Below, piece after piece: positions 39,605 to 57,400 of a stretch of 64,000 nucleotides of DNA. The notes beneath the pieces are model-generated. The model searched no databases. It had not been told where the DNA came from and saw nothing but the letters and a program-made list of their open reading frames with translations. Numbering within the stretch: the stretch's first letter is position 1; the number at the start of each line of letters is the position of its first letter. The position numbers and the translations under genes were made by a program. The stretch comes from Euprymna scolopes (Eukaryota): NCBI GenBank assembly GCA_053919585.1, contig JBSSHM010000070.1; one strand, 5' to 3'.

Positions 39605-40178
39605 TAGCGTTGTTTTCATACGGTGTTTTTTTTATTGTTGAAACCCCGTATGAAAAACGCTAAGTAGTTTGCTAGAAACAGCGAAGGTCAACTCTTTTTA
39701 ACTTTGATTATTTCGTTGCTCAACATTTTCGGCTTAAATCGATTAAAAAGTATGTCCTATCTCATCATACCTGGTATGAAAAAAGTAAATTCTAAGACAA
39801 CAAATTTATTGAGTAATTTCGTAGAAATCCCAGATATCAATTTTTCTATAACTTTGACACCAATTAAGTACTCTTAACCATTTATTTTTGGTGGTCAAAT
39901 CAAATGAAAACGTTAGATCTATGTCCAACGAACCTACATTAAAAATCTCATGTGCTTACACCTTAAAATTGGTGGAACAGTTTGATAGAGTTCTCAAGGA
40001 TCAATCGTTGAACTTTTACCTCTTTGCAGCCAAGTTTTTGGCCGAAAACCGATGAAAAAGATTTCCTTAACCTCAATACTTTTCTTTTTCATATGTTCAG
40101 TCGGTGGACCGAAAATTGACAGTTGTTTGATAGGGAAAAGTGCAGACAGATAGACACACAGACACACACCCATTTTCA

Positions 40179-40255
<77 letters not shown>
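39605..40255 (-). mobile_element. Probable non-autonomous Helitron-like repeat
   Basis: The right side reads GACAGATAGACACACAGACACAC..ttttcactta(TA)n, the reverse complement of a typical Helitron-N 5' end. An inverted repeat lies at 39605-39662. Positions 39920-39995 are homologous to 36645-36720. Confidence 0.4.
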
Positions 40256-40257
<2 letters not shown>

Positions 40258-41007
40258 CATTAAATCAACCGATATGAGTCCATGTTTCATCACCGTTCGA
40301 TAATAGTAATAGTAATCCATGGCAGCAAGCATTCTGATTGGATAAATAACATAACTGAGCATTAATTCTACAAAAGAAAATCTCATAATATTAGTCCCGT
40401 GAATTTGTATCTGAATATTTCCTACTGAGATATTACACTGACATCTCGGGTTAGCTAAATTTATATACATTTCTAGCACTAATATATATATGCAATTGCT
40501 TGTTATTTCTTTTATTTTTCCCCTTCATCCTCACGTTTCGTCAATATTATGTTTAAAACCTTTATTTTTTATAAGGTGTGTTTCACAAAATTTGATTAAC
40601 GTTAATTACCTAAGTAGCGGTTTTCATTAACGTTTCCTGATAAAATATACCTGAGGTATTTTTTGCTTTTTGCAAAGACAGATACGTGGCATGTTTATTA
40701 ACAAGTAATGAGCATATTACGTGATATTATGGCAGTTTAGGGGAAAACTCGGTTAATAATTGTTTTAAAAAATCACGTTTTTTATAAAAGATTACTACGT
40801 ACACTTTCAACCAGAATATTTGATGCTGTATAATGTACAAAGGAGATTTCTGTAAAAAAACAACCTTCATTAAATATCGATTTCCGTCCACATGTTAATT
40901 AATACGATAAAAAAACAATTATTGCACTGAGATAGAAAACGTAATAATTTAATATTAAAAAATAATGTTATAGAATGTTATAGGGATAGAAGCGCTCACA
41001 CACACAG

Positions 41008-41077
<70 letters not shown>

Positions 41078-41299
41078 CAGAATATCCCACCAAAAGCAAT
41101 TGTTATCACTGTTTTAACTCCAACATTATAACGGGCAAATGAATGCTAGCAAAAAGTATATGATGAGAGAGAGAGAGAGGGGGGAAGAGAGAGAGAGAGG
41201 GCGAGAGAGAATTGGTTGAGAGAAATATGTATATTCAAATGAGAAATGTCACCAACAATTGGTATGTATTTTTTAACATAATTTTATTATTCCGTCTTT

Positions 41300-42690
41300 G
41301 GATTTTTTATTTATAAAATCTAGCATCATTTAATAATGTTTTTCAAACATTGAAATAGTTTTTTTTTACGCATCTCAGACGTTCTGTTAAGCATCCTCTT
41401 CAGAAAGTATTCAAAGTGTAAAATATAAAAAAAAAATATTTAAAATTTGTTCAGAATGTATAAAAGCGTTTTCGCATTCCATATTTATGAGATGTTTCCG
41501 AGCGTTGAACATCTCTATAAATGAGTCTAAATGTCTTCCCGGGCGTATTGCACCCCTACCGTTGCTTATTGGTATTGCTGTCTTTTGCCTTTCTCCCAGT
41601 TTTCTTGTTTATCCTTTTTCTTCTTTATTTATTTTCATTACTTGGGTGGAAATGAGGATCACGTGGGTATTTGGTCAAATGAGGGCATAGGGGAATGTTG
41701 GTGCATGTGTGACTGGGTCTGTGTGTGTCTGTGTTCGTGTGTTTCCTTGTACTGGTTTGTAGAATGTGTGCTATATGTCTAATAATTTTGAAACATTATA
41801 ACTTTGCTTGTCTAAGAATGCGAATGTGATACACGTTGGTTTTTTTATGTGGGGAAAACCAGCCAAAGGTAATTGGTAGCGATATTTTCATTTAATTTTT
41901 AATTTTTTTTTTAGTTTCTTTTCTGGTGATATTTGTTTTAATCTTAATCAGTTGGCTAATTCATACTATTATGTTTGTTTAAATAAAAAGGCTCATTTAT
42001 AAATAGGCGTAGGAGATTTTCTATTTATTGTCTCCTTATGGGGGTGGGGCCAGAATCATGATAGTTTTTTTTAGTGTGGGGAAGATCTCGCCCCCCAGAA
42101 GCGAGGAAGCACCTTGAACAACACAAGTCTAAGAATGAGAATTATCTCCGTCATGAAGGATATCTCTTAAACTGACCGATGGTAGGAGGGGTGCATGCAG
42201 TGTTGGAACAGATACTACACTGTGGTTTTAACCATTTTTATTATTGTATGTTACGAGGTAAGGTTAGTATTGTTTAATGCGGTATACTTAAGAAAGGGGG
42301 GTTCCAGGATCCGGTTGTATGCGTGTGTGTGTTTTAATGCATCGATTCTGACGTATGTGTGGTGTTTACATGTAGATGAACGGGCGTGTTAGTGTGATTT
42401 GCATTTCATTTGCTTGTGTGATATTAAGCTCTGTTTTATTCGGGGGTGAATCTTGTAATGACATATTTTCATGTGTAAGTAAATAAAAATAATTGTCTGT
42501 CTGGAAGATTGGCATTAATTTGAAGCTATTTTCACTGCATGCATGCTCGTGTTTTGAAACATAGATGTGTCTTTTATCTCCAATTTTAATGTTGCTCTCA
42601 TATACTGCCATCTATTGCAGAAGTTTTTGGTGGTGACTATGTAAGAGTTGTCATATGCTGTGCATTATTAAATTCGAAAGAGTTACTTTT
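41300..42690 (-). mobile_element. Penelope-like element 3' fragment (GIY-YIG end and 3' terminal region)
   Basis: ORF 42366-42611 (..HACSENSFKLMPIFQTDNYFYLLTHE..) aligns by eye with 59960-60240. The downstream region is collinear with 58900-59900. Confidence 0.8.
41352..41412 (-). ncRNA. Degenerate PLE-type hammerhead ribozyme
   Basis: Minus strand: ttt-CTGAAGA-GGATG(cttaacagaa)CGTCT-GAGATGC-GTA-aaa. GAAA is mutated to GAGA. It sits at the same position as the 58932-58992 copy. Confidence 0.55.
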
Positions 42691-43676
42691 AAGAATTATA
42701 TAACTTGGAATAATTTTCGCTGTATACCACTATCAGCCGGTCAGTGAGGTGTGACAGACAGACGTGTTATAGTAAATGTCTTAAAGCGGTCTCATGAAGA
42801 TATGAAGATGGACCAGTAATTAGAGCCTGTGTAGCAAGAAAAAAATCATACCTGAGATGTTGGATCTGGGTGTGGCTCCTTTCTTTTCTCAAGATGATCT
42901 CTTCACCCTGGTGGCATTCTGGTGGGAATCTTCCTCTCTTTGTCCTCAGGGCCGCCTTTCGACTTCAGACATTTATGAAGGCATTCATGGCAGACACAAG
43001 AAAAACGACATGCGACACAATTGTAATATACATAAGGTATAACTAACTATTTTATTTTACAAAATATATGTTACAATAGATATTACAATTGATTTTACAA
43101 TTAAAACTGGACAATATGCTTTTCAAAGCTAACTGCCCTAACTAGTGTTGAGGGAGGGGGTGCCCCCCTCATTTACGGAGAGACAGAATATGCCTCCTCG
43201 CATCATGGTGGTCGTGCAGGAAAGAGACAGAAAATAGCTAGGGAATTATGGGAAGGGGGGTTCTTTGTATCTCTACGCTCATGACCAAATTACCTCTGGT
43301 CCATGCTGCAGAGTGTGTTAGAAACAGTGGCACAAAGAAATAGTGCCACATCCCTCCCTATGCAATCCGAAATTTATGAGTATTCATAAATTTCAGAAGT
43401 CCCTAATTTTCCGTGACTGGTGCGTCAACCGGTCGTCAGCAATCAATGTCTCCATGCTCTACGTTCCATCAGAGCCTCAGTAAAGCAAGTTATTTTTCAA
43501 CCAGGCTCCTGGTAGACTGGTATACTGCTTCAAATACCAGAGAGGGTAATCATCCTCGCCATCCATCGAGGCAATGACCTCATAATTTCAGTTACTGGAT
43601 TTACACTTTCTTAAGCAACCAGTATAATATTTTTTAACAAAGACGGATTTTACGTGACGTATATGTATTTCGTTAA

Positions 43677-45378
43677 GTCGCATTTTACGTGAGTTTATCA
43701 CGCCGACCTATACGTATTTGACTAAGCCGGATTCTACGTGGGTTTATCACGCCGACCTATATGTATTTGATTAATCGGATTCTACGTGAGTTTATCACGC
43801 CGACCTATACGTATGTGACTAAGTCGGATTCTACGTGAGTTGATCACGCCGACCTATATGTATTTGATTACATCGGATTCTACGTGAGTATATCACGCCG
43901 ACCTATATGTATTTCATTAAGTCGGATTTTACGTGAGTTTATCATGCCGACCTATACGTATTTGACTAAGCCGGATTCTACGTGAGTTTATCACGCCGAC
44001 CTATATGTATTTGATTAAGTCGGATTTTACGTGAGTTTATCATGCCGACCTATACGTATTTGACTAAGCCGGATTCTACGTGAGTTTATCACGCCGACCT
44101 ATACGTATTTGATTAAGTCGGATTCTACGTGAGTTTATCATGCCGACCTATACGTATTTGATTAAGTCGGATTTTACGTGAGTTTATCATGCCGACCTAT
44201 ACGTATTTGATTAAGTCGGATTTTACGTGAGTTTATCATGCCGACCTATACGTATTTGATTAAGCCGGATTCTACGTGAGTTTATCACGCCGACCTATAT
44301 GTATTTGATTAAGTCGGATTTTACGTGAGTTTATCATGCCGACCTATACGTATTTGACTAAGCCGGATTCTACGTGAGTTTATCACGCCGACCTATATGT
44401 ATTTGATTAAGTCGGATTCTACGTGAGTTTATCATGCCGACCTATACGTATTTGATTAAGCCGGATTCTACGTGAGTTTATCACGCCGACCTATATGTAT
44501 TTGATTAAGTCGGATTTTACGTGAGTTTATCATGCCGACCTATACGTATTTGACTAAGCCGGATTCTACGTGAGTTTATCACGCCGACCTATACGTATTT
44601 GATTAAGCCGGATTCTACGTGAGTTTATCACGCCGACCTATATGTATTTGACTAAGTCGGATTCTACGTGAGTTTATCATGCCGACCTATACGTATTTGA
44701 CCAAGCCGGATTCCACGTGAGTTTAGCACGCCGACCTATACGTATTTGATTAAGCCGGATTCTACGTGAGTTTGTCACGTCGACCTATACGTATTTGATT
44801 AAGTCGGATTCTACGTGAGTGTATCATGCCGACCTATACGTATTTGATTAAGCCGGAGTCTACGTGGGTTTATCACGCCGACCTATATATATTTGATTAA
44901 GTCGGATTCTACGTGAGTTTATCACGCCGACCTATATGTATTTGATTAAGTCGGATTGTACGTGAGTTTATCATGCCGACCTATACGCATTTGATTAAGC
45001 CGGATTCTAACTGAGTTTATCACGCCGGCATATATGTATTGTACTAAGCCGGATTCTACGTGAGTTTATCACGCCGACCTATATGCATTTCATTAAGTCG
45101 GATTCTACGTGTGTTTATCATGCCGACCTATACGTATTTGACTAAGCCGAATTCTACGTGAGTTTATCACGCCGACCTATATGTATTTGATTAAATCGGA
45201 TTCTACGTGAGTTTATCACACCGACCTATATGTATTTGACTAAGCCGGATTCTACGTGAGTTTATCACGCCGACCTATATGTATTTGATTAAGTCGGATT
45301 CTACCTGAGTTTATCACGTCGACCTATACGTATTTGACTAAGCCGGATTCTACGTGAGTTGATCACGGCGACATATAC
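43677..45378. repeat. Minisatellite of about 35 copies of a 49-bp unit with an internal bulged hairpin
   Basis: Consensus GYCGGATTYTACGTGAGTTTATCAYGCCGACCTATAYGTATTTGAYTAA. Degenerate related units extend from ~43588 to ~45610. There are no unique spacers. Confidence 0.97.
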
Positions 45379-47236
45379 TTTTTTTTTTAAAGTTTGCATA
45401 ACATTATATCCGTAACTGGATTTACGCTCCCTTCAGCAACCAGTATAATGTATTTTAACCAAGTCGGATTTACGTTACGTAATCACGCCGACCTATATGT
45501 TTTTTTTAAGTTAATACTTCAGTTACTGGACTTACGCTCTTTTCATCAACCGGTATAATGTATTTTAAATAAGTCCGGGTTACGTGACCTCATCACGCCG
45601 ACCTATATGGATTTAGTAAAACCTTGGTCTTCAGAGGTTCTGATCCAATTAAATTCTGTTAGAGCAAGGAGTCTGCCGCCGAGCGACCAATAAAAACTAT
45701 CCACCACGGACTATTTATTAATTCTATAAAGAATTAATTAAGAAGGGCACTCAGCCTTCATGAGTTAGAATACTCAATTAGGGGGGGATTAAAAAAATAA
45801 GTAATTCAGGAACCTGGTATACATTAAATCAATAAAATAGGGTGTTAACATTTTTTCTTAAAGAAAACATTTTCAAAAAATCATTTCAGAGCACCTCGGT
45901 AACAATTAGAATTTGTTTACACAATGCAAACGAATTTCAGTTATCACATTCATAATTAACTTTTTCCCAAATTTCAGGGTACATTTAAAAAGTATGTATT
46001 TTTTCAAAACTTGATTTACAAAAGATCATTAAAATTTAATTCCAAAATTCAAAAATTATTCCAAGCATTTGGTTCATTAATAAAATTAATCTTCCTAAAA
46101 GATCATAGAAAATTCATTTTGAATCAATTTACCCTTCACAATGAGATTCAGAGACATCCCAAAACTTTTTCATTTCGTAATTATTATTTTTAAAATTCAG
46201 TGTACATTTAAAGTTATTTAATTGATTCTTTACAATCATTTCTTCTTATAGACCATGATCAAGGTCATTTCGAATTCAGACAATTTTCACGTTAATTAAC
46301 TATTTTTTTTCAAAGTAATTATTTTATTATTTAAAAGCAACACTTTTCCTAAAGTCACTCACAAGGAGTATTTCGAATTAATAAACTCCCGCCACACCTG
46401 GGAGTCACATTAGTTAACTACCAGTTTTGTATAGTTAACAACTCGAAAAAATTAAAGTTTCAATTAAAGAGAGATCTTTCTAGGCTGAGGAAATATTGTT
46501 TCTTCTTAAGAATTAAGGCAATTTTACGTATATACTCCTCAGTCAATATTTCAGGGACCCCTATCATACGGTCCAATTTAAAAAAAAAAACCTTGATTAA
46601 AGAATTCGCTCGTATAATTCTTCCTTTAAAATCATCTAGAATTCAGGAAATTTCTTTCGTTAGTCAAAAAATATTTCCTTAGAAATTATAAATAATTCAG
46701 AGAATATTCGAAATGCGTAATTTAAAAAAAACTATGAATATTTCAGAGAACTCTTAAAACCTTCACGTAATCATGTAACAGTTGGCTTTTGCAAACACTC
46801 GAAGATTTCAAAAAAGTACTTCAAGTTCTATTTGAATAATTGTTTTCATTTTTATTTTTACTAAAAACCAATTGAAGACATCATTTAATGTAATTTAACG
46901 AAGCATAAATAATTTTGTTCTTTAAACTTGGTAGAAAAATTAAAAAACTCCAAGTTAATTCGTTATTATATGCCCTCCTTTAATCAGCCATAGAGGTTTA
47001 GCTATACAATTATTAAAACGCAAGAGTGGAGATAGATAATGAGGGGGAAAAGAAGGGAATAGAGACAGAGCGATGCCATTACACACCCCACCACCCTCAT
47101 AACATCATTACGTAATAACAAACAAATATTCGACAATTTTAAAAGTCACTCTCTCGTCCTCACAGACTCTAACAGGTAAGGGAATGAGCGAGAGGTCCAT
47201 AGGTATACCTGGACCCATCCTCGTTCTAAATAAGTT

Positions 47237-49950
47237 AATTTGATTGATTACATTATTTCCAGGAAGGCAGCTTTGCGGGACTTCTGTAGTGTGCGTGTTA
47301 TGCGTGGAGCTGAATCCGGCCCAGATCAGTTTCTGGTACACGGAAAGTTGAAAATCTGTATAAGAAGGAAGTGTAGGTTGGGTGGTGTTGCGATTCCCAG
47401 GCGGGTTAATGTTTCATGGCTCGATGATCAAAGTGTACGTGAAAAGCTTATGTAGTTGATTTTGATTATTTTGCTGGGGCATGGCCGAATTTTAAAAAAA
47501 AACAATCTATGAAATAAGCGTAGATGTTCTTGTCTCCCGCAAATCCAAACATCAGTATTCGTTTGATGATAATGATTCTGAAATTACTCAACTCTTAATT
47601 GCTAAAATGAGTTGCACCATAAAATGTTGCCTGTCTTTCATTGAGGTCGAGAGTCCCTCCAATAGTCACTTAAAGCAAACAAGGGTATTCTCCAAAAGCG
47701 ACTCCGACAAATGAAGAATACGTGGTGGGCTAAACTTGCCAACCAAATCCAGATGGTTATTGATTGTAAAGACCTCAGACGCATGTAGCACTTGCTTCAA
47801 AAAGCTTTTGTTCCTCAAACACTATCTATATCTCCCCTACTCTCAAGTGATGGGATTGCCCTTATAAAGGATCCTAAAAACGATTCTTCTTTTGTTGGGC
47901 CGAGCATTATAATGATCTCTTTAACCACCCCTATAATGTTGATGAGGATGACATCAATGAACTTTTAACAGGGCAGGAACTTATCCATGAAATGTCTGTG
48001 TTTCCATCTGAGAATGAAATTAGAGATAGAATCAAGAAAGTGAACGTTGGGAGGGATCGAGAGTTTGATAGTATTCCTGTGGAAGTCCTCTTACATGAGG
48101 GTGATAAACTTCTTCATGAAATTCTTCATGTTATGACTGATGCCTGGAAGGGTGTTCCCGTCCATCAGGATAAAGTTGATGCAATTCTTATATCACTGTA
48201 CAAGCGAAATGGGCACAGGACCGACTGTGAAAGTTATCGTGGGATAAGTTTGTTGGAAGCAGTTTACAAAGTATTTTCCAGAGTTCTACTCAATAGATTG
48301 TTAAAGCATATTTGCCCATCCGTCATTCCAGAAAGCACAAGTGGCTTTCGTCCTGGCAGAGGAACCACGAACATGATCTTCTCTGCTCGGTAGTTGCAGG
48401 AGCGATGTACTGAACACCATGTTCTGCTTTATCAGGTTTTGTGTATTTGATTAAGTCTTTTGATACGGTGAACAGAAGTGTCCTATGGATAATTCTGGGG
48501 AAGTTGTGATGGTCACCTCAGTTTCTACGATTACTCAGGGAGCTACACACCGGAATCCTATCGGAACCAATTCGGTTGACAATGGTGTGAAGTAAGGTTG
48601 TATCCCATCACCTCCACTTTTTCAATGTATTTTGCAACTATGCTATCGTATGCTTTTATGGAATGTTCTCTAGGTGTTTATCTGCGTTTCAGAACCACAG
48701 GTAGGGTTTTTGATCTTCGTCGTTTTCATGCTTCTACAAGGGCATTTCAGCACCTTGTTCGTGAATTGCTTCATGCCGATGACGCCGATTTTGTGGTCCA
48801 TAATGCGAGAGATATGCAGGGTATCATGGATCTGTTTCTGGGCGTATGCCCGTCTTTTGGACTTACTATTAATCTTTAGAAGACTAAGGTCATGTTCACA
48901 CTTCCGTCCGGTAGTTTGTATGTGAAACCAAATATTTTTGTCAACAACCAGAGACTTCCCGTGGTTGACACATTTGTGTCACTTGGGTAGTACTCTCGCC
49001 AGAGATAGAACCCTGGATGCTGAGGTCAACTATAGGATACAGCGTGGCACTAAGGCTTTTGGTGGCTTAGAGAATGTGTGTGGTCTGATAGGTGTATAAC
49101 TATTCATACAAAGATCAGTGTCTATCAATCTTGTATTTTACCATCCCTGCTTTACGCTTCTGAGGTATGGGCAACTTATAGTAGACACAAATAAGTCAGG
49201 GAGAGAGTGCACCAGAAATCTCTGAGACACATTCTGAGCTACAGGTGGAGCACTTGTATAACTGGTATTGATGTTCCCATGCGAGATGACGTACCTAGTA
49301 CCTAGATTATACGCAACCAGGTGAGGTAGACTTGACATCTGGCAAGGATTGACAACGATAGATTGCCAAAGCGTCTGTTCTATCGTGAAATTACACAAGG
49401 AAAGCGTCCACAACATAAACCGAGGAAACGCTTTAAAGAAAAATTCAAAGATAATTTTAAAGCTCTTGGTATTGACTTATTCAGTGTGGAAAGTGATTCC
49501 AATGATCGTAAAAAGTGGCGCTTATTGGTCTACAATGGCTGTGATATTTTTGAGAAGAAAAATATGAGCATGCAAAAATGAAGCGTGATATCCGGACGAA
49601 AAATCTGTCAATATATCAGGTCTGTCGGAGAATTTCATTCAGAGCCACACCTGTGATTTATGCGATAAAATGACTTATCCCGAGCTGGCCTAGCAAGTCA
49701 CAAGCGTTCACATGGATATCAATCTTTCTTTGATGGGGAAAACACTGCAGGGCACAGATGTTCTGTAAATCGAGTTTAGGCCTGAAGCGTCATATGAACG
49801 CCCACAGTAGAGCAGCACCAGTTGGCATCCCTCAATCTCACCTTAAGTATGACCTTTGCAACAGACTCCGTAAGAGCAGGGCTAGTCTTAAAAACCACCG
49901 TAGTTCACTCAGAAAATAGGAATTGGTGCATCTTGATCACATCTCAACAT
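47237..49950 (+). mobile_element. Decayed RTE-clade LINE (end of APE endonuclease, RT, C-terminal zinc fingers)
   Basis: LIDYIISRK..DQFLV (end of EN), CESYRGISLL, GFRPGRGTTNMIFSAR, RELLHADD and RLPKRLFYREITQGKRP. Many stops and frameshifts. Confidence 0.92.
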
Positions 49951-50099
49951 GTATATATGTATGGGTGTGTAATTGTATTTGTGTATATATAATATATCAA
50001 AAATATTTCAAAAATACATGAAAATGAATGAGTAATCACCAATAAAGCCAAGGAAAGATAGTCTTTTTCTTTCAAGAAGTGACAATCACAGTTATATGT

Positions 50100-50405
50100 A
50101 TTTTTTATTATATGTTCACACAAACAAGGCATATTGCCACTTTGTTGTAGGGGACTACTATCAGGGGAACGGACATCAGTAGTACTGTGTAGGGAGTTGG
50201 GCAGCAAGATGTTGCTTCACGTTGCACTTGAACTTATGCATGCCAGTACAGTTGGGGAAGCAGCAACTCGACAGACAATTCCAAAGTTTAGCCTTCTTGG
50301 GGAAGAAACTACTCTAGTAGAAGGCTCTCTTACATCTAGGGATCTCTACTGTGAAGGGGTGGGATTTAGCTTTGAGTTTTCTTTGAGACATACTCGGTTT
50401 TGAGA
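50100..50405 (-). mobile_element. CR1-group LINE 3' fragment
   Basis: Collinear similarity to 24695-24950 (aaacaaggca..tgccacttt..ggggactact; cacttgaactt..cagttggg.aagcag; ctagggatctc.actgt). Confidence 0.8.
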
Positions 50406-51699
50406 AATAATCCCGCTAATGTTCTATTTAATGAGAAAAAAACTTAAAAATTAAAACAAAGTCGAGGTCAGTAAATGCTTATTTATTGTGTTCTTGATTA
50501 CATATAATTAAATATAATAATTGTATTTCTGAATACCAAGTTTACTTTGTTGGCCAAAAATTACTTTTCGGATGTTTGCCATTACAATATTGCATCAAGT
50601 TTCTTAAAAGTTCATAAATACACCATTTCATTCAAACATTCTTCCCATAGGTGTGGTCTGTCGTTTATTCTCGTGTCTAAGATTATTGCCATAATGAATT
50701 TATTTTTTTGTTAAAAATGATTATTTTTATGTTTTCTATTTAAATTGTATGAATTATTCATACGCTTTTCTAATACTTTTCCTTTGTTGTGTTGTTTGAT
50801 ATCTTTTTAAAGTTATATTTGTTATAAGGTTAATGAATTATTTTCAATCTTACTTAAAGGAATTAATTTTAAACAACGAAATACATCCTCAGAATCAAAT
50901 ATCGGTTTATATAAAATCCCAAGAGGCTTATATAAAGTTTAGCAAACGTGTGGCAGTAAAGTCAGACAGAATACAGAACTATATGTAGAAGATAGTGTAA
51001 TGTATGCAGAAAACAAATTAGTTAAATTGACATGTATTCGGATTCTGTCGAGAATGTCTCAGAGATATGGGTGTGAAGATTGCTATAATCAGTTATTAAC
51101 CGCAAAATCTTTAAGTGGATTATGTAAAAGCCCAATCAAGCCTAAAATAAAAGTTCCCGCTTGATGTGTGCAATGTTTATAAAGACGGAACTGTGGAGAT
51201 TTGTCAGCTGTGACGGCATTTCCATGTTTAAGCTGTAATTGTAGCAAGATACGAAAATAGATATACTGAGAGAAGAAAATAAGAAAACACAATTATATAA
51301 ATAAAAAAAGGAAAAGTATTAGGCGTGTCAATAGATAGTACTACTATAGCAGATAAAGAAACACATAAAAGACTTGCAACACGGATTAGGAAAACGCCCG
51401 TTTGTACGAACCCCAGCGAAACAAAGAACATCAAAAGTGCCCTGAATTGTTAATATAGCACCGGACTTACTACTTAGATATAAATAAGTCACTTGTACCC
51501 ATTCCCCTCCTCCCCCTTCTTTTAATTTTCAAATGGAGAGTATATAATACAGTGGATGTGTTATCGGCAGCACCAGTAACTCTTGCTTCTCCAATTTTGT
51601 CATTTAGTCCTCATTCAATGTGTGATTTTTCTGACAAAGGGTGAAGAAAAAGCTGCTTAAGCTCGGTAGTACTTGGTGACCAGTAGTCTGAGAGTTCGG

Positions 51700-54438
51700 A
51701 AATTTCCCGTGTGGCAGAGATATCTCTAGAGAAGATCCTAATTTACCCTATATATGCTTCCGGGTTGCACTTGCTAACACCACTGCATTTATATTTGCCT
51801 TCTATAGGCCCCACAACACCGGAGTTACTATCTTTAAGAGCATATCTGAGAAAATAGACCATATACTGTCTTCACATCACTCGGTTAAAATCCACATCTG
51901 TGGTGACTTCAACGTCCATGACGTAGAATGGCTGACCCGTACAAAAAAGACGGATGATGGGGGGAAGTGTTGTCATGATTTTGTCCTTGCTTATGACCTC
52001 ACTCAGATTGTTCGCGAGCCCACCCGTGTGCCCGATACACCGGGTCAATATGCTAGCCTCCTAGACCTATTTCTCTCAACTTCCCCTGAGCTATGTTAAT
52101 GTTCCGTTCATTCTCCTCTAGGATCCTCCGACCACTCCGTTTTATCAGTTAAGATAAAAACGAAATATAAGAATCCCCCACACGTACCCCTCCACCGTAA
52201 TGTATACCGATACTTTATGGCTGACTGGGATAGCTTCCGTACATTCATATCTGATTTACCTCTGCACTCCATGTTTAAAAAGGAAGTGTTCTCTATAGTA
52301 TCAGATCTGACCGAATGGTTAAGTGTAGTCATAGACCAATTCATACCATCAAAAAAATTCCAACACACACCTAACAGCCAGCCATGGTTCTCCCCAGAAT
52401 GTGCTGCTGCTATCGCGCACAGAAATCACTTTTTCCATAGCTACCAACGTAATAGATGCACTGAGACTAAAGCTGCTTTCAGGACTGCAGGCAACCACTG
52501 TAAAAGAGTAATAAAAATGCAAGAAAGTTATATGTCCAGTCTGTTAAATCCAAGGTAGCTGATCAGCGGCTTGGTTCCCACCAGTTTTGGCAAATAGGAA
52601 ATAGGATCCTGAACAGAAGTGTGCGTTCTATCCCCAACATTATCAATGGACCAGAGGTCATTTCGTCAGCGTCAGACAAGGCCAAACTATTTGCAAAGAA
52701 ATTTGCAGCTAATTCTACCCTATACGACGAAGGCCATCAACTCCCCATATTTCCTCCTATAACATAGAACAAACAAGGAAACATACAAATATCCATTCAG
52801 GAGGTCGCCAAGCTAAGCAAGAACCTAGATTCCAGTAAAGCAACTGCCCCTGATGGCATCCCAATTATAGTGTTAAAAAGCATCAAACAGAATTTGCTAC
52901 TATACTTACGAAGCTACTAAAGCGCTGCCTTAAAGAGAAGTGCTTTTCGACTCTCTGGATGAAATCATCTGTTTGCCCTGTATTTAAGAATTCAGGTGAT
53001 AAGTCATCTCCCTCTCAGTACAGACCAATAAGTCTCTTGTGTATTATGAGTAAGTTGCTAGAATCCATATTAAATAGAGAAATAGTCAACCACCTCAACA
53101 AGAATAACTTTCTTAGTGACACACAATATGGTTTCCGCTCTGCAAGATCTACCACAGATGTGCTAACGGTTATACCACACAGGATTAGTGAATCTCTTAA
53201 CAAAGGCTTCCTTTCTAGGGCAATTGCTCTTGACATATCAAAGGCCTTCGACAAGGTATGGCATAAGGGTCTACTTCACAAGATTTCCAGCTCCGGTACA
53301 ACTGGAAATGTTTTCTCAGTCATTTAATCATTTCGCTCCGATAGGCTCATAAGAGTAGTTGTAGATGGACGAATATCGGAGGCCTGCAATATAAATGCTG
53401 GAGACCCTCAAGGGTCAATCCTATGCCAAACTCTCTTCCTCATCTACACCAATGACCTCCCTAAACACATACTTAAATCATTCTTTGATATCTATGCTGA
53501 GGACACGACCATCTACGGCAAAACATCAAAGGTTGTAAATGACATAGTTCTCTCTGATTCTCTCTCCTCTGATCTCGAGCGCGTGTTTCAGTGGGGGAAG
53601 ATATGGCTGGTTACGGTTAATGCATCAAAAACCAAACTCCTATCCTTACATCATCAACGCTCTGATCCTCCTCTGGCATCAATTGTGATGGATGGCTCTC
53701 GTCTGGATGAGGCCCCGTGTTTTGACAAGCTTCTGGGTTTGACCTTTACTCCTGATCTGAAATGCAACACGTAAATCAAGTATGTTGCCAAGGTCGCTGG
53801 AAAGATGGTGGGATCCTTCTACCGCTCCGGAAGATATCGCACTACTGATGCAATTCGCTATCTATATAAAAGCCAAGTACGTCCAAGGATTGAATACTGT
53901 TGCCATATCTGGGCAGGAGCTGCAAAAAAACACCTCTCCTGCCTTGACAGAGTACAAAATAGACTTTGTTGCTTAGTGGTTGATGTTCTTTTCTCTACCC
54001 TGCAACCTTTCTCCCACAGAAGAGACATTCTTGTTTTATCGTTATTTCCATGGCAGGTGCTCATCTGAACTCCATTCTCTGGTCCCCCCTCGCCAATTTT
54101 TCACGAAAAACACCCGTCTAGCTGAACCCACTGTGAAAAATTTCCCCCACTCTATATCTGTGCCTAAATCAAAACGCGGATTCTATGAACAAAGCTTCTT
54201 TCTTAGAACTGCACGTCTGTGGAACTCTGTTCCGTTTGCCTGCTTCCCACTGGACTACAACTTGGATGTGTTCAAGTCCAATGTTAACAAATTCCTAATG
54301 AACCGCCCCCTTTAGTAAACACTTCATCAAATCTCCACACTAACGTAATGTACTTTCAATAACCTTTATCCCTGAGTGGCTTCCGGGCCTTGATAAGTGG
54401 TGATCACTGTGTAAAAAAGAAAAAAAAAAGAAAAAAAG
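51700..54438 (+). mobile_element. CR1-group LINE with near-complete decayed ORF2 (APE endonuclease and RT) and a poly(A) tail
   Basis: FYRP..ICGDFNVH..LGSSDH (EN), PWFSPEC, QYRPISLL, QYGFRSARST, ALDISKAFDKVWH, IEYCCHIWAG and SFFLRTARLWN. A-rich tail at 54412-54438. Confidence 0.95.
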
Positions 54439-57400
54439 ATTATCGATTCCGTTAGTGACGTAGCAACTCCCGTTTAACTTTAAATTCATGAATAAGACTT
54501 AGTGGATACGGAGCAGAATCTTCTTAAACACAAAGCAGCGTTTGCAACGCACTTAGGCAGGGACTTGAATTAAATGAGAAATAATAAATTTAATGACAAT
54601 ATAGTTGGATCCCTGTAGTGAAGATGGTTATCCACGATTAAGTGTAAGAGAAGGCAAGCGCACTTATACTTCGTTGATGTGAAGATAATAAACAGATGTA
54701 TATTACTAAACACTCATTGCCTTTTGCCAGCCGGGGTGATAAACCACATCGCTCCATGAGCATAAGTATCGGAAGTGGATACATACCGTTACAGCAAAGA
54801 TCGTATGTATGCATCAATAAGACTAGTGGAGAAAATTACATTACAACACCAGCGTCTTAATACATACAGGATTCCTGTATGTTTAATAATTAATCAATAA
54901 TCATATATGGCATCGAGCAACTCCGAAGTAAACTTTTTAGTTATGTGTGTGAAATACTAGTGGCTAATGCGGTTGTAAAAATGGCGTGTCTGCTGCTCAT
55001 AACAAATACAATCTATATAGATATTATTATTTAATTAAAATAGAGTGTAAAATAGATAGATAAATTACGGCTGGTCGAATTAAGAAAATAAAAAAAATAT
55101 AATGGAATTGCCAAACGTATTATGAAAACAGAAACTAGTTTAAGGAAAAAAAAAAACGCAGGCAAATCCCTGTTCACGAAATGGAATATTACTAAACCCT
55201 AGAAATATATTGAGGTGTCATACAATCTATTTTCTGTTCTTGTATTATATTATGGAACTATTGAAGAGCGGCTGCTTTTTGTGCAGTAAATTGTTGTGAC
55301 AACAGTTATTGTATTTCTTTTTCATGCATGTTGCTGTAGTATAATTCCCTATAATTGTAGAAGAAAGAATTGAGAGTCCTAAATGAATGATAAATAGGAA
55401 ATGAACAACACTGGAAAATATCGGATCTGAGCAAAACCAGCTGTAAATCGTATTGATGACTTATGTCGTCAACCTTATATATCTACTAAGAAATTTAGAT
55501 TTTAAAACACAGGGAGAAATATTAAAACTGTCTTTGATTGCTAAAAGTTTAATGCAAAAGATCAATTGAAATTGAAATTGTAATATCAAAATAATCGAAC
55601 AAAAATATACGGACGGCGTGTGGGCGTGATCTGAATATATGCCATCAATAAATGCCGACACTTAGACAGAAGAGCGACAGCAAGATAGAAACCAAACCAC
55701 AGACTTCTATTGTGGTCACACCGACAACTACACACCACACTTCCACTTCCATGAACTCTCTGGTTTCATTGTAATGTAAAGATAATGTGGATTTAACACG
55801 TAATCCGTGGGTTACAAATACCCTGCTATCAGCGGGAACGTACTAGTGGTAAGGATTTACAAACAAGCAGGACTATAAATTGTATTAGCTACAACATTAC
55901 AAATGTACCTGATTTTTATGCATCTATCCTTCCCGGGTAACTTAAATAGCTGGCCAATATCTATGCAAAACGGGTGCTTGATTGTTGCAATTCTAAATTT
56001 GTAAAACCTACTAGTTCTCTAAGTTCCTATCTTAAGGGATTATCCACACATGATATAAAAAAGACCGTACCGTCAATGATATTATCGTTCAGAAACAAGC
56101 TGCCCAAATCACTCTATTTTCGAAGTTATTTTGCAAAAAATACATTTCTGATTTCATAAAATATTATTTTCCATTTGCTTACTTCATGCAGAACAGTAAT
56201 GCCTCTGATAAATGTATGTTTTCTTTGGATATTTGTTGTCTATTTATTGATTTTCCTTCTTGCAGGTTACCAATATACTGACATTGCAAATATTATGTAG
56301 CTCCTATTACACATTGACATAATTATCTAAATAAAAATATCTAAATATTACGGATCGTTATCATAATATAAAAAAATCGTACAATACAAAATTTTCGGCA
56401 AATAAAAAATAGTTAAATGTAAGTTATGCTAGTGTTTTTCTTTTAGCGTTTCTTAAGTGTTTAAGTATTGTTCCATACTAATTTAATTCCGATATTTCAA
56501 ATGAGTAACTTTCGTATTTAAGGTTGTGTCTTTTTTTTCAGGAAATATTTGATTTATATTAGTACTATAATATTATATGTAATTGTTTTTTTTTTTCTAA
56601 AACTGTAACAAGACACAGATTATTGGTTACTGTTGTGAACCTTATTCCCAGTTAGAAATTTTCGGGTGGATAGAATATCACATTTTTAACAACGTTTAAA
56701 AAGTGCAAGCAGGCAAATCCTTTCAAAAAGTAAAAAGAACAATGACATTTACAGTACACCTCCACCATGGAAAACAGACCTTCGAAGAAAAAAAGTATAG
56801 GAAGGGCCTTCAAAGCTCGCTACCTTTATTTAGGAACGATTAAAAAATAAACATATTAGTTCAAACTGTGATTACAATACGGGAAAAGGGTTAAAAAGAC
56901 AGAAAGAATTCATACTTTTTCAGACTATTTACAACAAGTACCATCAACGGCTGAAATTTGCAAAAAAAAACAAAAAAAACACACGAAAACACCTGAGTAT
57001 TAAGCCAAACATGTTTTGTCTGTCGAATTGGTTAACGATATTCATGAATAGCTGATGAAACATATTAAACCACCTGTAATGTTCAAAACCGAATATCAGT
57101 TGCCATAAAGGCAAAACGATCAGACTCACAATGTTTGGAGGGATTGAGTATATTTTTGAATATTTATTCCACGTCGTCGATCTTTCCCATTTCATACGAA
57201 AAGAATGTGCTTTTTTTTTTAAATGAAACTGACACTTCTGGTATTTTCTTTTGCATATTTAAAAATAATATTTACTTGGAAATAAAATTAATCTGCATAT
57301 TTTTTTTGTCGAGTAAATGTCAGTTTAAAACAAAAGGTTTTGATTTTCTCTAAATTTAACTTAGGCTTATTTATGGATGTAATTACGGATTTTAAATAAT

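What the first reader, a model, noticed from the sequence alone, without database searches (positions are those of the whole stretch)
43588..45610. Array of ~35 structured 49-bp units with compensatory stem changes in flanking paralogous units
Seen: each unit (A) forms a bulged hairpin, GTCGG-attcta-CGTGA-gttta-TCACG-CCGAC, followed by an AT-rich linker. Three related units (B, with stems at 43594-43623, 45415-45444 and 45525-45554) keep an ATTTAC-like segment and the AT-rich linker. In B the outer stem is swapped to ACTGG/CCAGT (CCGGT in the third, a T-G wobble). The overall layout is B-A(x~35)-B-A-B-A, so a ~110-bp B-A dimer appears to have had one A subunit expand. Inference: paired substitutions suggest selection on an RNA or ssDNA fold. 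Options include multimeric protein-binding hairpins, a small-RNA precursor array, or replication-origin repeats analogous to viral homologous regions. There are no spacers, so it is not CRISPR. The functional strand is unresolved because different variants give G-U pairs on opposite strands.
Basis: partly seen in the sequence, partly recalled or inferred. Interest (0 to 1): 0.75.

Follow-up and report, generated by a model that had tools for sequence, protein, structure and literature searches.

The report
Expanded minisatellite inside a dead retrotransposon
The 35-unit array of 49-bp hairpin-forming repeats is a locally expanded copy of a variable tandem repeat that sits in the non-coding tail of an abundant, gene-less LTR retrotransposon, so it is a known kind of jumping-gene feature and not a new RNA gene or replication origin.

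Summary
There are 35 in-phase 49-bp units at 43677-45390, three B units at the stated stems, and the layout B-A(n)-B-A-B-A.

The context changes the reading. The array lies about 300 bp from the 3' LTR (42723-43350) of a roughly 5-kb non-coding LTR retrotransposon. The element has 4-bp target duplications, a polypurine tract and a 19-nt tRNA-His primer site. It runs on the window's minus strand and has hundreds to about 2000 copies in this 5.9-Gb genome.

In 38 other copies the A unit is repeated 1-12 times (median 8). Ten of 11 full copies have 99-100% identical LTRs, so the family is young. The window copy is old (about 9% diverged) and truncated at 47194. Its 35 units carry variants found only here and in one 98%-identical duplicate, so the expansion happened in place.

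Variation within the array is not compensatory. Across the family's unit types, however, the outer helix pairs in 55 of 55 cells on the element's sense strand, with three pairs changed on both sides between A and B. A maintained RNA hairpin is therefore plausible for the family but not proven. Neither an RNA test nor a search for an autonomous partner could be run.

The parts
42719..42722 (.). Flanking GCTG, the presumed target-site duplication half at the 3' end of the element. The partner is lost with the truncated 5' part.
   Evidence: Full copies have 4-bp duplications directly outside TATACC...GCCACA. The window flank was read.
42723..43350 (-). 3' LTR of the element, about 630 bp. The plus strand reads TATACC...GCCACA, so the sense strand starts TG.
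   Evidence: In 11 full copies this stretch occurs twice in direct orientation, about 4.4 kb apart. The two LTRs within a copy are 99-100% identical in 10 of 11.
43351..43359 (-). Polypurine tract: AGGGAGGGA on the minus strand, abutting the LTR.
   Evidence: Sequence read.
43360..43593 (-). Unique non-coding stretch between the polypurine tract and the first B unit.
   Evidence: Collinear with all sister copies.
43594..43642 (-). B1 unit, with outer stem at 43594-98 and 43619-23.
43643..43676 (-). Internally deleted first A unit (34 nt).
   Evidence: window row of the head alignment.
43677..45390 (-). 35 A units of 49 bp. This is the expanded minisatellite, with a weak 98-bp higher-order pattern.
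   Evidence: The private unit type occurs only here and in the C11 duplicate.
45391..45414 (-). Spacer between the array and B2, conserved in the family.
   Evidence: A 32-mer that runs from this spacer into B2 has 416 genome matches at up to 2 mismatches.
45415..45620 (-). B2 (45415-45462), A' (stem 45463-45492), spacer, B3 (45525-45572), A'' (stem 45573-45602). Together these are two B-A dimers of about 108 bp.
45621..47194 (-). Rest of the non-coding internal region. Homology to full copies stops at a (GA)n microsatellite. The upstream 1.1-1.3 kb, the primer-binding site and the 5' LTR are missing.

Best explanation
**What it is.** The array is a variable-number tandem repeat in the 3' non-coding region of a non-autonomous LTR retrotransposon primed by tRNA-His. 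The element lies on the window's minus strand. The window holds an old, 5'-truncated copy.

**Ancestral module.** The family carries three B-A dimers (B1-A, B2-A', B3-A''), and the first A is repeated.

**How the copy number changes.**
1. Between insertions the number differs (1-12) even among copies whose two LTRs are still identical. It therefore changes at or between rounds of retrotransposition. The most likely cause is reverse-transcriptase template switching or mis-aligned strand transfer among the repeats; this step is inferred.
2. After insertion, this copy gained private point mutations, some of them CpG to TpG. A pair of neighbouring units was then amplified in place to 35 units, by replication slippage or unequal exchange. 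The order of events is shown by the private variants; the molecular route is inferred.

**Function.** The array at this locus has no function of its own.

**The hairpin.** It is a property of the family's sense-strand RNA. Its helices are kept across the six paralogous unit types while the loops and linkers differ. I give about 40% that this reflects selection on a cis-acting RNA element in active elements. The remainder goes to a mutational origin (template switching that copies one arm from the other) or to chance.
For: **Dispersed family**
- The 241-bp B-A-B-A tail has at least 939 first-look candidates; the 38 scored full-length hits outside this locus are 91-92% identical.
- A spacer-plus-B2 32-mer has 416 matches.
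- The 5' region has 2177 candidates at 96-100% identity.

**LTR retrotransposon anatomy**
- Direct repeats of about 630 bp lie about 4.4 kb apart in 11 copies.
- 4-bp target duplications are seen in 5 copies.
- The polypurine tract abuts one LTR.
- Two bases inside the other LTR there is a 19-nt match to the 3' end plus CCA of this genome's tRNA-His(GTG) gene.
- No internal ORF of 100 aa or more exists, and no Pfam hit passes its threshold.

**Age**
- LTR pairs are 99-100% identical in 10 of 11 copies.
- The window copy is about 9% diverged and stops at a (GA)n.

**Copy number**
- 1-12 units, median 8, in 38 other copies, against 35 here.
- Whole-dimer deletions and block duplications occur in other copies.

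**In-place expansion**
- The GTCGG...CATG unit type is found only in C203 and its 98%-identical C11 duplicate.
- Lag-2 identity exceeds lag-1 identity.

**No satellite elsewhere**
- The family core has 2638 matches, in small clusters in the places listed.

**Hairpin**
- It is the minimum-free-energy fold. For the family-type unit on the sense strand, dG is -12.8 kcal/mol and z is -3.0.
- The outer helix is paired in 55 of 55 cells, with 3 pairs changed on both sides and G-U intermediates on the sense strand.

**Precedent**
- Hypervariable 3' UTR tandem repeats of plant Ogre/Tat elements are ascribed to aberrant strand transfers during element replication (PMC7004042).
Against: **What is missing**
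- The autonomous partner was not found, so the superfamily is unknown.
- The RT template-switching step is inferred only from copy-number differences among young copies. Slippage in master copies would look the same.

**Weaknesses of the hairpin claim**
- The covariation comes from essentially one A/B split among paralogues, not from independent lineages.
- B hairpins alone are not more stable than shuffled sequence (z from -1.5 to +0.4).
- The 241-nt tail gives z of only -1.6 on the sense strand.
- A test of lineage-shared against rare variants in stems and non-stems is not significant (1 and 12 against 9 and 35).
- One family-level variant, in the last array unit, keeps its pair only on the antisense strand.
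Confidence: 0.85

Rival explanations
1. The hairpin modules are functional cis-acting RNA elements of the retrotransposon family. An example would be multimerised binding sites for a packaging (Gag) or nuclear-export factor in the 3' part of the genomic RNA. A gene-less parasite that must be mobilised in trans would gain from carrying more of them. This does not contradict the best explanation. It adds a function to the family module, not to the dead window array.
For: - The helices are invariant or covarying while the apical loop, most of the internal loop and the linker differ among A, A', A'' and B1-3.
- The outer helix is paired in 55 of 55 cells, with AU/GC/GU, CG/UG/UA and UA/CG states. 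RNAalifold recovers it.
- A short unpaired block next to the outer helix (sense GUAA...UCC) is the most conserved part of the unit.
- Four G-U states occur on the sense strand (pair table). In B1 a C-to-U change in the inner helix also keeps a G-U there (my reading).
- The module sits just upstream of the 3' LTR and is kept in a non-coding element.
Against: - There is effectively one evolutionary contrast (A against B).
- Thermodynamic z-scores are modest.
- Lineage-level variants give no significant stem protection.
- Young copies with only 1-3 A units exist, so a high copy number is not required.
- No expression, partner element or protein-binding data are available.
Confidence: 0.35
2. The palindromic arms are a mutational by-product. 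Intrastrand template switching during DNA replication or reverse transcription copies one arm from the other. This creates and restores perfect inverted repeats, including clustered 'compensatory' changes, without any selection on a fold. The repeat is otherwise neutral cargo.
For: - The mechanism is documented as a source of hairpins and apparent compensatory substitutions (PMC8794818).
- The three A/B double changes are adjacent (outer-helix pairs 1-3), as a single templated event would give.
- The region is visibly recombinogenic: copy-number changes, dimer deletions and block duplications.
- There is no significant stem protection in the shared-against-rare variant test.
Against: G-U intermediates at two outer pairs (UG in array A, GU in one B3 subfamily) suggest stepwise single changes, not one templated conversion. 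Helices are conserved alongside divergent loops in A against A'/A''.
Confidence: 0.3
3. The units act at the DNA level as arrayed protein-binding sites, that is, an enhancer or insulator carried by the transposon. Each A unit holds two inverted RCGTG cores (TACGTGA and, on the other strand, GGCGTGA), which resemble bHLH-PAS type sites. This resemblance is from memory and was not tested.
For: - The blocks TTACGTGA and ATCACGCCGACCTATA are invariant among A, A' and A'', including positions outside the helices.
- From general knowledge, not checked here: tandem binding sites in non-coding parts of LTR elements are known, for example the Su(Hw) sites of Drosophila gypsy.
Against: B units keep the outer inverted repeat with a different sequence and lack the CGTG cores. 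A dimeric DNA-binding protein would not tolerate that, whereas a nucleic-acid fold would. No motif scan or chromatin data are available.
Confidence: 0.1
4. The window array is itself a functional locus: a small-RNA or structured-RNA precursor array, or an origin-like repeat.
For: Only the regular hairpin potential of each unit.
Against: - It lies in a truncated copy about 9% diverged from the family.
- Stem and non-stem columns vary equally within the array, 0.064 against 0.057.
- The frequent variants weaken pairs on one strand or the other.
- No Rfam family matches it at E up to 1 on either strand.
- Helices of 10 bp in total are too short for a miRNA-type precursor (general knowledge).
Confidence: 0.04

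Closest known systems
Hypervariable 3' UTR tandem repeats of plant Tat/Ogre LTR retrotransposons (Macas et al. 2009, as summarised in PMC7004042)
   Same: - Short tandem repeats lie between the internal region and the 3' LTR.
- Monomer number varies among copies.
- The proposed origin is aberrant strand transfer or recombination during element replication.
- Occasional in-genome expansion moves towards satellite-like arrays.
   Different: - The host here is an animal, probably a mollusc.
- The element is non-coding and non-autonomous, with a tRNA-His primer site.
- The unit is a B-A dimer with a conserved hairpin.
- The expansion seen is modest (35 units), and no large satellite was seen in the places the tools listed.
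Non-autonomous LTR retrotransposons (LARD / TRIM class)
   Same: LTRs, target duplication, primer-binding site and polypurine tract are present. There is no gag or pol, the copy number is high, and insertions are young.
   Different: At about 5 kb with 630-bp LTRs it is larger than a TRIM and near the lower range of LARDs (class sizes from general knowledge). The helper element is unidentified.
Other structured tandem repeats inside transposons of this same genome (scan notes s1-279847, s1-275125, s1-295498)
   Same: A hairpin-rich, non-coding module occurs in variable tandem number at a fixed spot of an LTR retrotransposon.
   Different: Those are 383-nt GC-rich units inside a copia LTR. This one is a 49-nt AT-rich unit in the internal 3' region of a different, non-coding family. 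I did not re-test those notes.
Retroviral 3' cis-acting RNA elements (for example the constitutive transport element of simian type-D retroviruses, or the direct repeats of avian sarcoma virus). Resemblance recalled from memory.
   Same: A repeated stem with internal-loop motifs lies just upstream of the 3' LTR, on the sense RNA.
   Different: There is no sequence or Rfam match, and no evidence of factor binding or export or packaging activity. This is an analogy of position and shape only.

Membership tests
LTR retrotransposon | Two long terminal direct repeats flanking an internal region | tested here: met
   11 sister copies carry window 42723-43350 twice in direct orientation, with element lengths of 4.8-5.3 kb. 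The window copy itself keeps only one LTR.
LTR retrotransposon | Short target-site duplication directly outside the LTRs | tested here: met
   4-bp duplications in L023 (AATG), L024 (AAAA), L026 (ATGG), L027 (CAGA) and L028 (CTGC).
LTR retrotransposon | Primer-binding site complementary to a tRNA 3' end, next to the 5' LTR | tested here: met
   A 19-nt match to the 3' end plus CCA of tRNA-His(GTG) genes of this genome, 2 nt inside the LTR.
LTR retrotransposon | Polypurine tract abutting the 3' LTR | tested here: met
   AGGGAGGGA on the minus strand at 43351-43359.
Non-autonomous (LARD/TRIM-like) subclass | No gag or pol coding capacity | tested here: met
   No ORF of 100 aa or more lies within two full copies. 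Nine ORFs of 50-84 aa have no Pfam hit near threshold.
Non-autonomous (LARD/TRIM-like) subclass | An autonomous helper sharing LTR or cis sequences | not tested
Hypervariable 3' UTR tandem repeat of LTR elements | Tandem repeat located between the internal region and the 3' LTR, with copy number varying among element copies | tested here: met
   The repeat region (B1) starts about 240 bp from the polypurine tract and the first full A unit about 320 bp from it. Copy number is 1-12 in 38 copies and 35 here.
Satellite DNA derived from the repeat | Long arrays independent of the element | tested here: not met
   The family core has 2638 matches, in small clusters in the places listed. The window array is still inside the element.
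CRISPR array | Repeats separated by unique spacers | tested here: not met
   Units are head-to-tail with no spacers, in a eukaryotic genome of 5.9 Gb.
Any described RNA family (Rfam 15) | Covariance-model match | tested here: not met
   No match in 40000-49000 at E up to 1, apart from (TA)n look-alikes of miRNA models at 41003-41082.
Conserved structured RNA element | Base pairs kept through compensatory change in independent lineages | tested here: inconclusive
   The outer helix is paired in 55 of 55 cells, with 3 pairs changed on both sides. This comes from one A/B paralogue split only, and the lineage-variant test is not significant.
Conserved structured RNA element | Transcription of the folded strand | not testable with these tools

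The most novel reading that the evidence does not exclude
The B-A hairpins are multimerised cis-acting RNA signals, for packaging or export, with a conserved internal loop between covarying helices. A gene-less LTR retrotransposon amplifies them to compete for its helper's proteins. The variable array would then be an adaptive 'decoy dosage' trait of a parasite of a parasite.
Probability: 0.25. Interest if true: 0.6.

Novelty: new member of a known kind. Interest (0 to 1): 0.3.

Why it matters
- **For annotation.** The region should be masked as transposon-internal minisatellite, not flagged as an RNA gene.
- **For repeat biology.** It is an animal (probably molluscan) example of the 'hypervariable 3' tandem repeat' so far described mainly for plant Ogre/Tat elements. 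It shows both stages: copy-number change among very young insertions, and a later in-place expansion that is the first step towards a satellite.
- **If the hairpin is functional.** It would point to a cis-acting RNA signal in a recently active non-autonomous retrotransposon, which could be tested experimentally.

Tried and rejected
1. **Rfam.** A scan of 40-49 kb at E up to 1 found nothing but (TA)n artefacts.
4. **Stem against non-stem variation.**
   - Inside the window array there is no difference (0.064 against 0.057).
   - Among units of the other (sister) copies, stems look more conserved (0.007 against 0.061). That mostly reflects inherited differences among unit positions.
   - The cleaner shared-against-rare variant test has no power.
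5. **An older subfamily with the window's A' type.** None exists: 4 genome matches, of which 2 are this locus and its duplicate.
6. **The missing 5' part of the element elsewhere in the window.** It is absent.
7. **Inverted-repeat search for terminal inverted repeats.** It was swamped by (TA)n, and a DNA-transposon reading was dropped once the LTRs, primer site and polypurine tract were found.
8. **Coding reading.** The period of 49 is not a multiple of 3, and no ORF of 90 aa or more crosses the array.
Full report
**1. Observation**

The region reads as described. Tandem Repeats Finder gives one array at 43656-45378 with period 49, 35.2 copies and 89% matches. An in-phase scan gives 35 units from 43677 to 45390, preceded by a 34-nt internally deleted unit.

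Single A units fold into the stated bulged hairpin as their minimum-free-energy structure. The array shows a weak 98-bp alternation of two unit types: identity is 92.3% at lag 2 against 89.9% at lag 1.

**2. Context**

The window belongs to a 5.9-Gb, 925-contig eukaryotic assembly (contig C203). It is AT-rich and full of (TA)n. Earlier notes of this scan call it a mollusc, probably a cephalopod. About 46 contigs of 70-200 Mb fit that, but I did not test it.

The 241-bp B-A-B-A tail is not unique. It has at least 939 first-look candidates. Apart from this locus and its C11 duplicate, the 38 scored full-length hits are 91-92% identical.

Local BLAST of twelve 10-kb sister loci against the window shows a sharp common boundary at 42721-42723. 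It also shows that window 42723-43350 occurs twice in direct orientation in the 11 copies measured, about 4.4 kb apart.

The features of an LTR retrotransposon are all present:
- Five copies have clean 4-bp target-site duplications directly outside these repeats.
- Immediately inside the left repeat the plus strand reads a pyrimidine run. On the minus strand this is a polypurine tract, AGGGAGGGA.
- Two bases inside the other repeat the minus strand reads 19 nt complementary to the 3' end plus CCA of tRNA-His(GTG). The gene was found in clusters in this genome and confirmed by ARAGORN.
- Full copies are 4.8-5.3 kb. They have no ORF of 100 aa or more, and no Pfam hit passes its threshold.

This is therefore a non-autonomous LTR retrotransposon primed by tRNA-His, lying on the window's minus strand. 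The array sits in its 3' non-coding part, about 300 bp upstream of the 3' LTR.

**3. The family and this copy**

The two LTRs of a copy are 99-100% identical in 10 of 11 full copies. The 5' region has 2177 candidates at 96-100% identity. The family is young and abundant.

The window copy differs from these by about 9%. It loses homology at an internal (GA)n at 47194 and lacks the 5' 1.1-1.3 kb, the primer site and the 5' LTR. A second locus on C11 is about 98% identical over more than 7.7 kb, including the non-transposon flank and the long array. It is either a haplotig or a recent segmental duplicate.

**4. The repeat across the family**

Every copy examined has the same plan: B1, then n A units, a 24-nt spacer, B2-A', a spacer, and B3-A''. 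The last two dimers are detected as a period-108 repeat.

In 38 other copies n runs from 1 to 12, with a median of 8. The window has 35. Copies whose LTRs are still identical have n of 1, 6, 8, 9 and 10. The number therefore changes fast, at or between transposition cycles. Other copies show a whole-dimer deletion (L041, L049) or a duplication of the whole block (L052, L056, L057).

The window's frequent variants are absent from 130 array units of 18 other copies. These variants are T at unit position 2, T at position 25 and T at position 37. The GTCGG...CATG unit type occurs only in C203 and the C11 duplicate. The 35-unit array is thus an in-place expansion of mutated units in a dead copy. 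Genome-wide the family core has 2638 matches, all in small clusters in the places listed, so no satellite has formed.

**5. Is the hairpin under selection?**

*Inside the window array: no.* Stem and non-stem columns vary equally (0.064 against 0.057). The frequent variants hit different pairs and do not compensate each other.

*At family level the picture is more interesting.* All family array units read GCCGG at the 5' arm. On the plus strand this leaves a C-A mismatch. On the minus strand, the element's sense RNA, it gives a U-G wobble. That strand folds to -12.8 kcal/mol with z of -3.0, against z of -0.6 for the plus strand.

I aligned the stem-to-stem parts of the six paralogous unit types from two subfamilies on the sense strand. 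The results for the outer helix are:
- It is paired in 55 of 55 cells.
- Three pairs are changed on both sides between A-type and B-type units.
- G-U intermediates occur (AU/GC/GU, CG/UG/UA, UA/CG). From the same table, 51 of 55 cells would pair on the plus strand.
- RNAalifold predicts the same helix.

The inner helices of A and B have unrelated sequences but both can pair. A short unpaired block next to the outer helix is the most conserved part of the unit.

*Several points weaken this.*
- The contrast is essentially one A/B split among paralogues.
- B hairpins alone are no more stable than shuffles (z from -1.5 to +0.4).
- The 241-nt tail has z of -1.6 on the sense strand and -0.3 on the antisense strand.
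- A test of lineage-shared against rare variants in stem and non-stem columns is not significant (1 and 12 against 9 and 35).
- One family variant favours the other strand.
- Clustered 'compensatory' changes in inverted repeats can also arise in one step by template switching (PMC8794818).

I therefore rate a selected sense-strand RNA hairpin at about 40%.

**6. Mechanism**

*Shown:* the element's anatomy, its orientation, the family-wide variation in copy number, the private variants, and the local expansion.

*Inferred:* copy number changes during reverse transcription by template switching among repeats, as proposed for the 3' UTR repeats of plant Ogre/Tat elements (PMC7004042). The local expansion is inferred to have come from slippage or unequal exchange.

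**7. Comparison and verdict**

The closest known kind is the hypervariable 3' tandem repeat of LTR retrotransposons, here in a non-autonomous animal element. It parallels other transposon-internal structured repeats already noted by this scan in the same genome. It is not CRISPR and it matches no Rfam family. Nothing supports an origin-like repeat or a stand-alone RNA gene. I class it as a new member of a known kind, of modest interest. The possibility of a cis-acting RNA hairpin in the active family remains open.

Noticed in passing
L023:5520-5567 and L028:5436-5483 (next to the 5' LTR, read on the minus strand): Two young copies with 99.8-100% identical LTRs carry a different sequence at the primer-binding site. 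It keeps the first five bases (TGGTK) but then departs from the tRNA-His complement by several changes and insertions, and it is too long for a canonical tRNA 3' end. The primer used by this subfamily is unclear.
   Followed up: partly
window 51704-54440: A separate, very abundant repeat with 37824 first-look candidates. It has one fixed end near 54420-54440 and variable starts at the other end. This pattern is typical of 5'-truncated LINE copies.
   Followed up: no
window 41786-51391 against G000:C11:132766500-132776499 (L039): C203 and C11 share about 98% identity across the element and its flanks. C11 has about 425 bp extra at window position about 42665. C203 may be a haplotig or a recent segmental duplicate.
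   Followed up: partly
G000:C40:48029735-48044491 and C3:12677202-12988621: The tRNA-His 3' end pattern has about 2000 genome matches. They include a dense same-strand array on C40 with spacings of about 283 bp and 566 bp, and a looser cluster on C3. This looks like a large tandem tRNA-His gene array or a tRNA-derived repeat.
   Followed up: no
L052, L056, L057 (after B3); L041, L049 (between A' and A''): Three copies duplicate the whole block from the pre-B1 region to B3. Two copies have lost exactly one B-A dimer. The region therefore recombines at several repeat levels.
   Followed up: partly
G000:C8:36115735 and C8:36120092: Two same-strand matches of the family spacer lie 4357 bp apart. 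They could be two elements in tandem sharing an LTR. The DNA could not be fetched.
   Followed up: no
L027:5667-5978 (minus strand): The flank of one sister copy encodes a reverse-transcriptase-like ORF of LINE type, so that copy inserted into another retroelement.
   Followed up: no
window 41003-41082: A (TA)n microsatellite gives weak, sub-threshold Rfam hits to the mir-1277 and mir-297 models. These are artefacts of simple sequence.
   Followed up: yes
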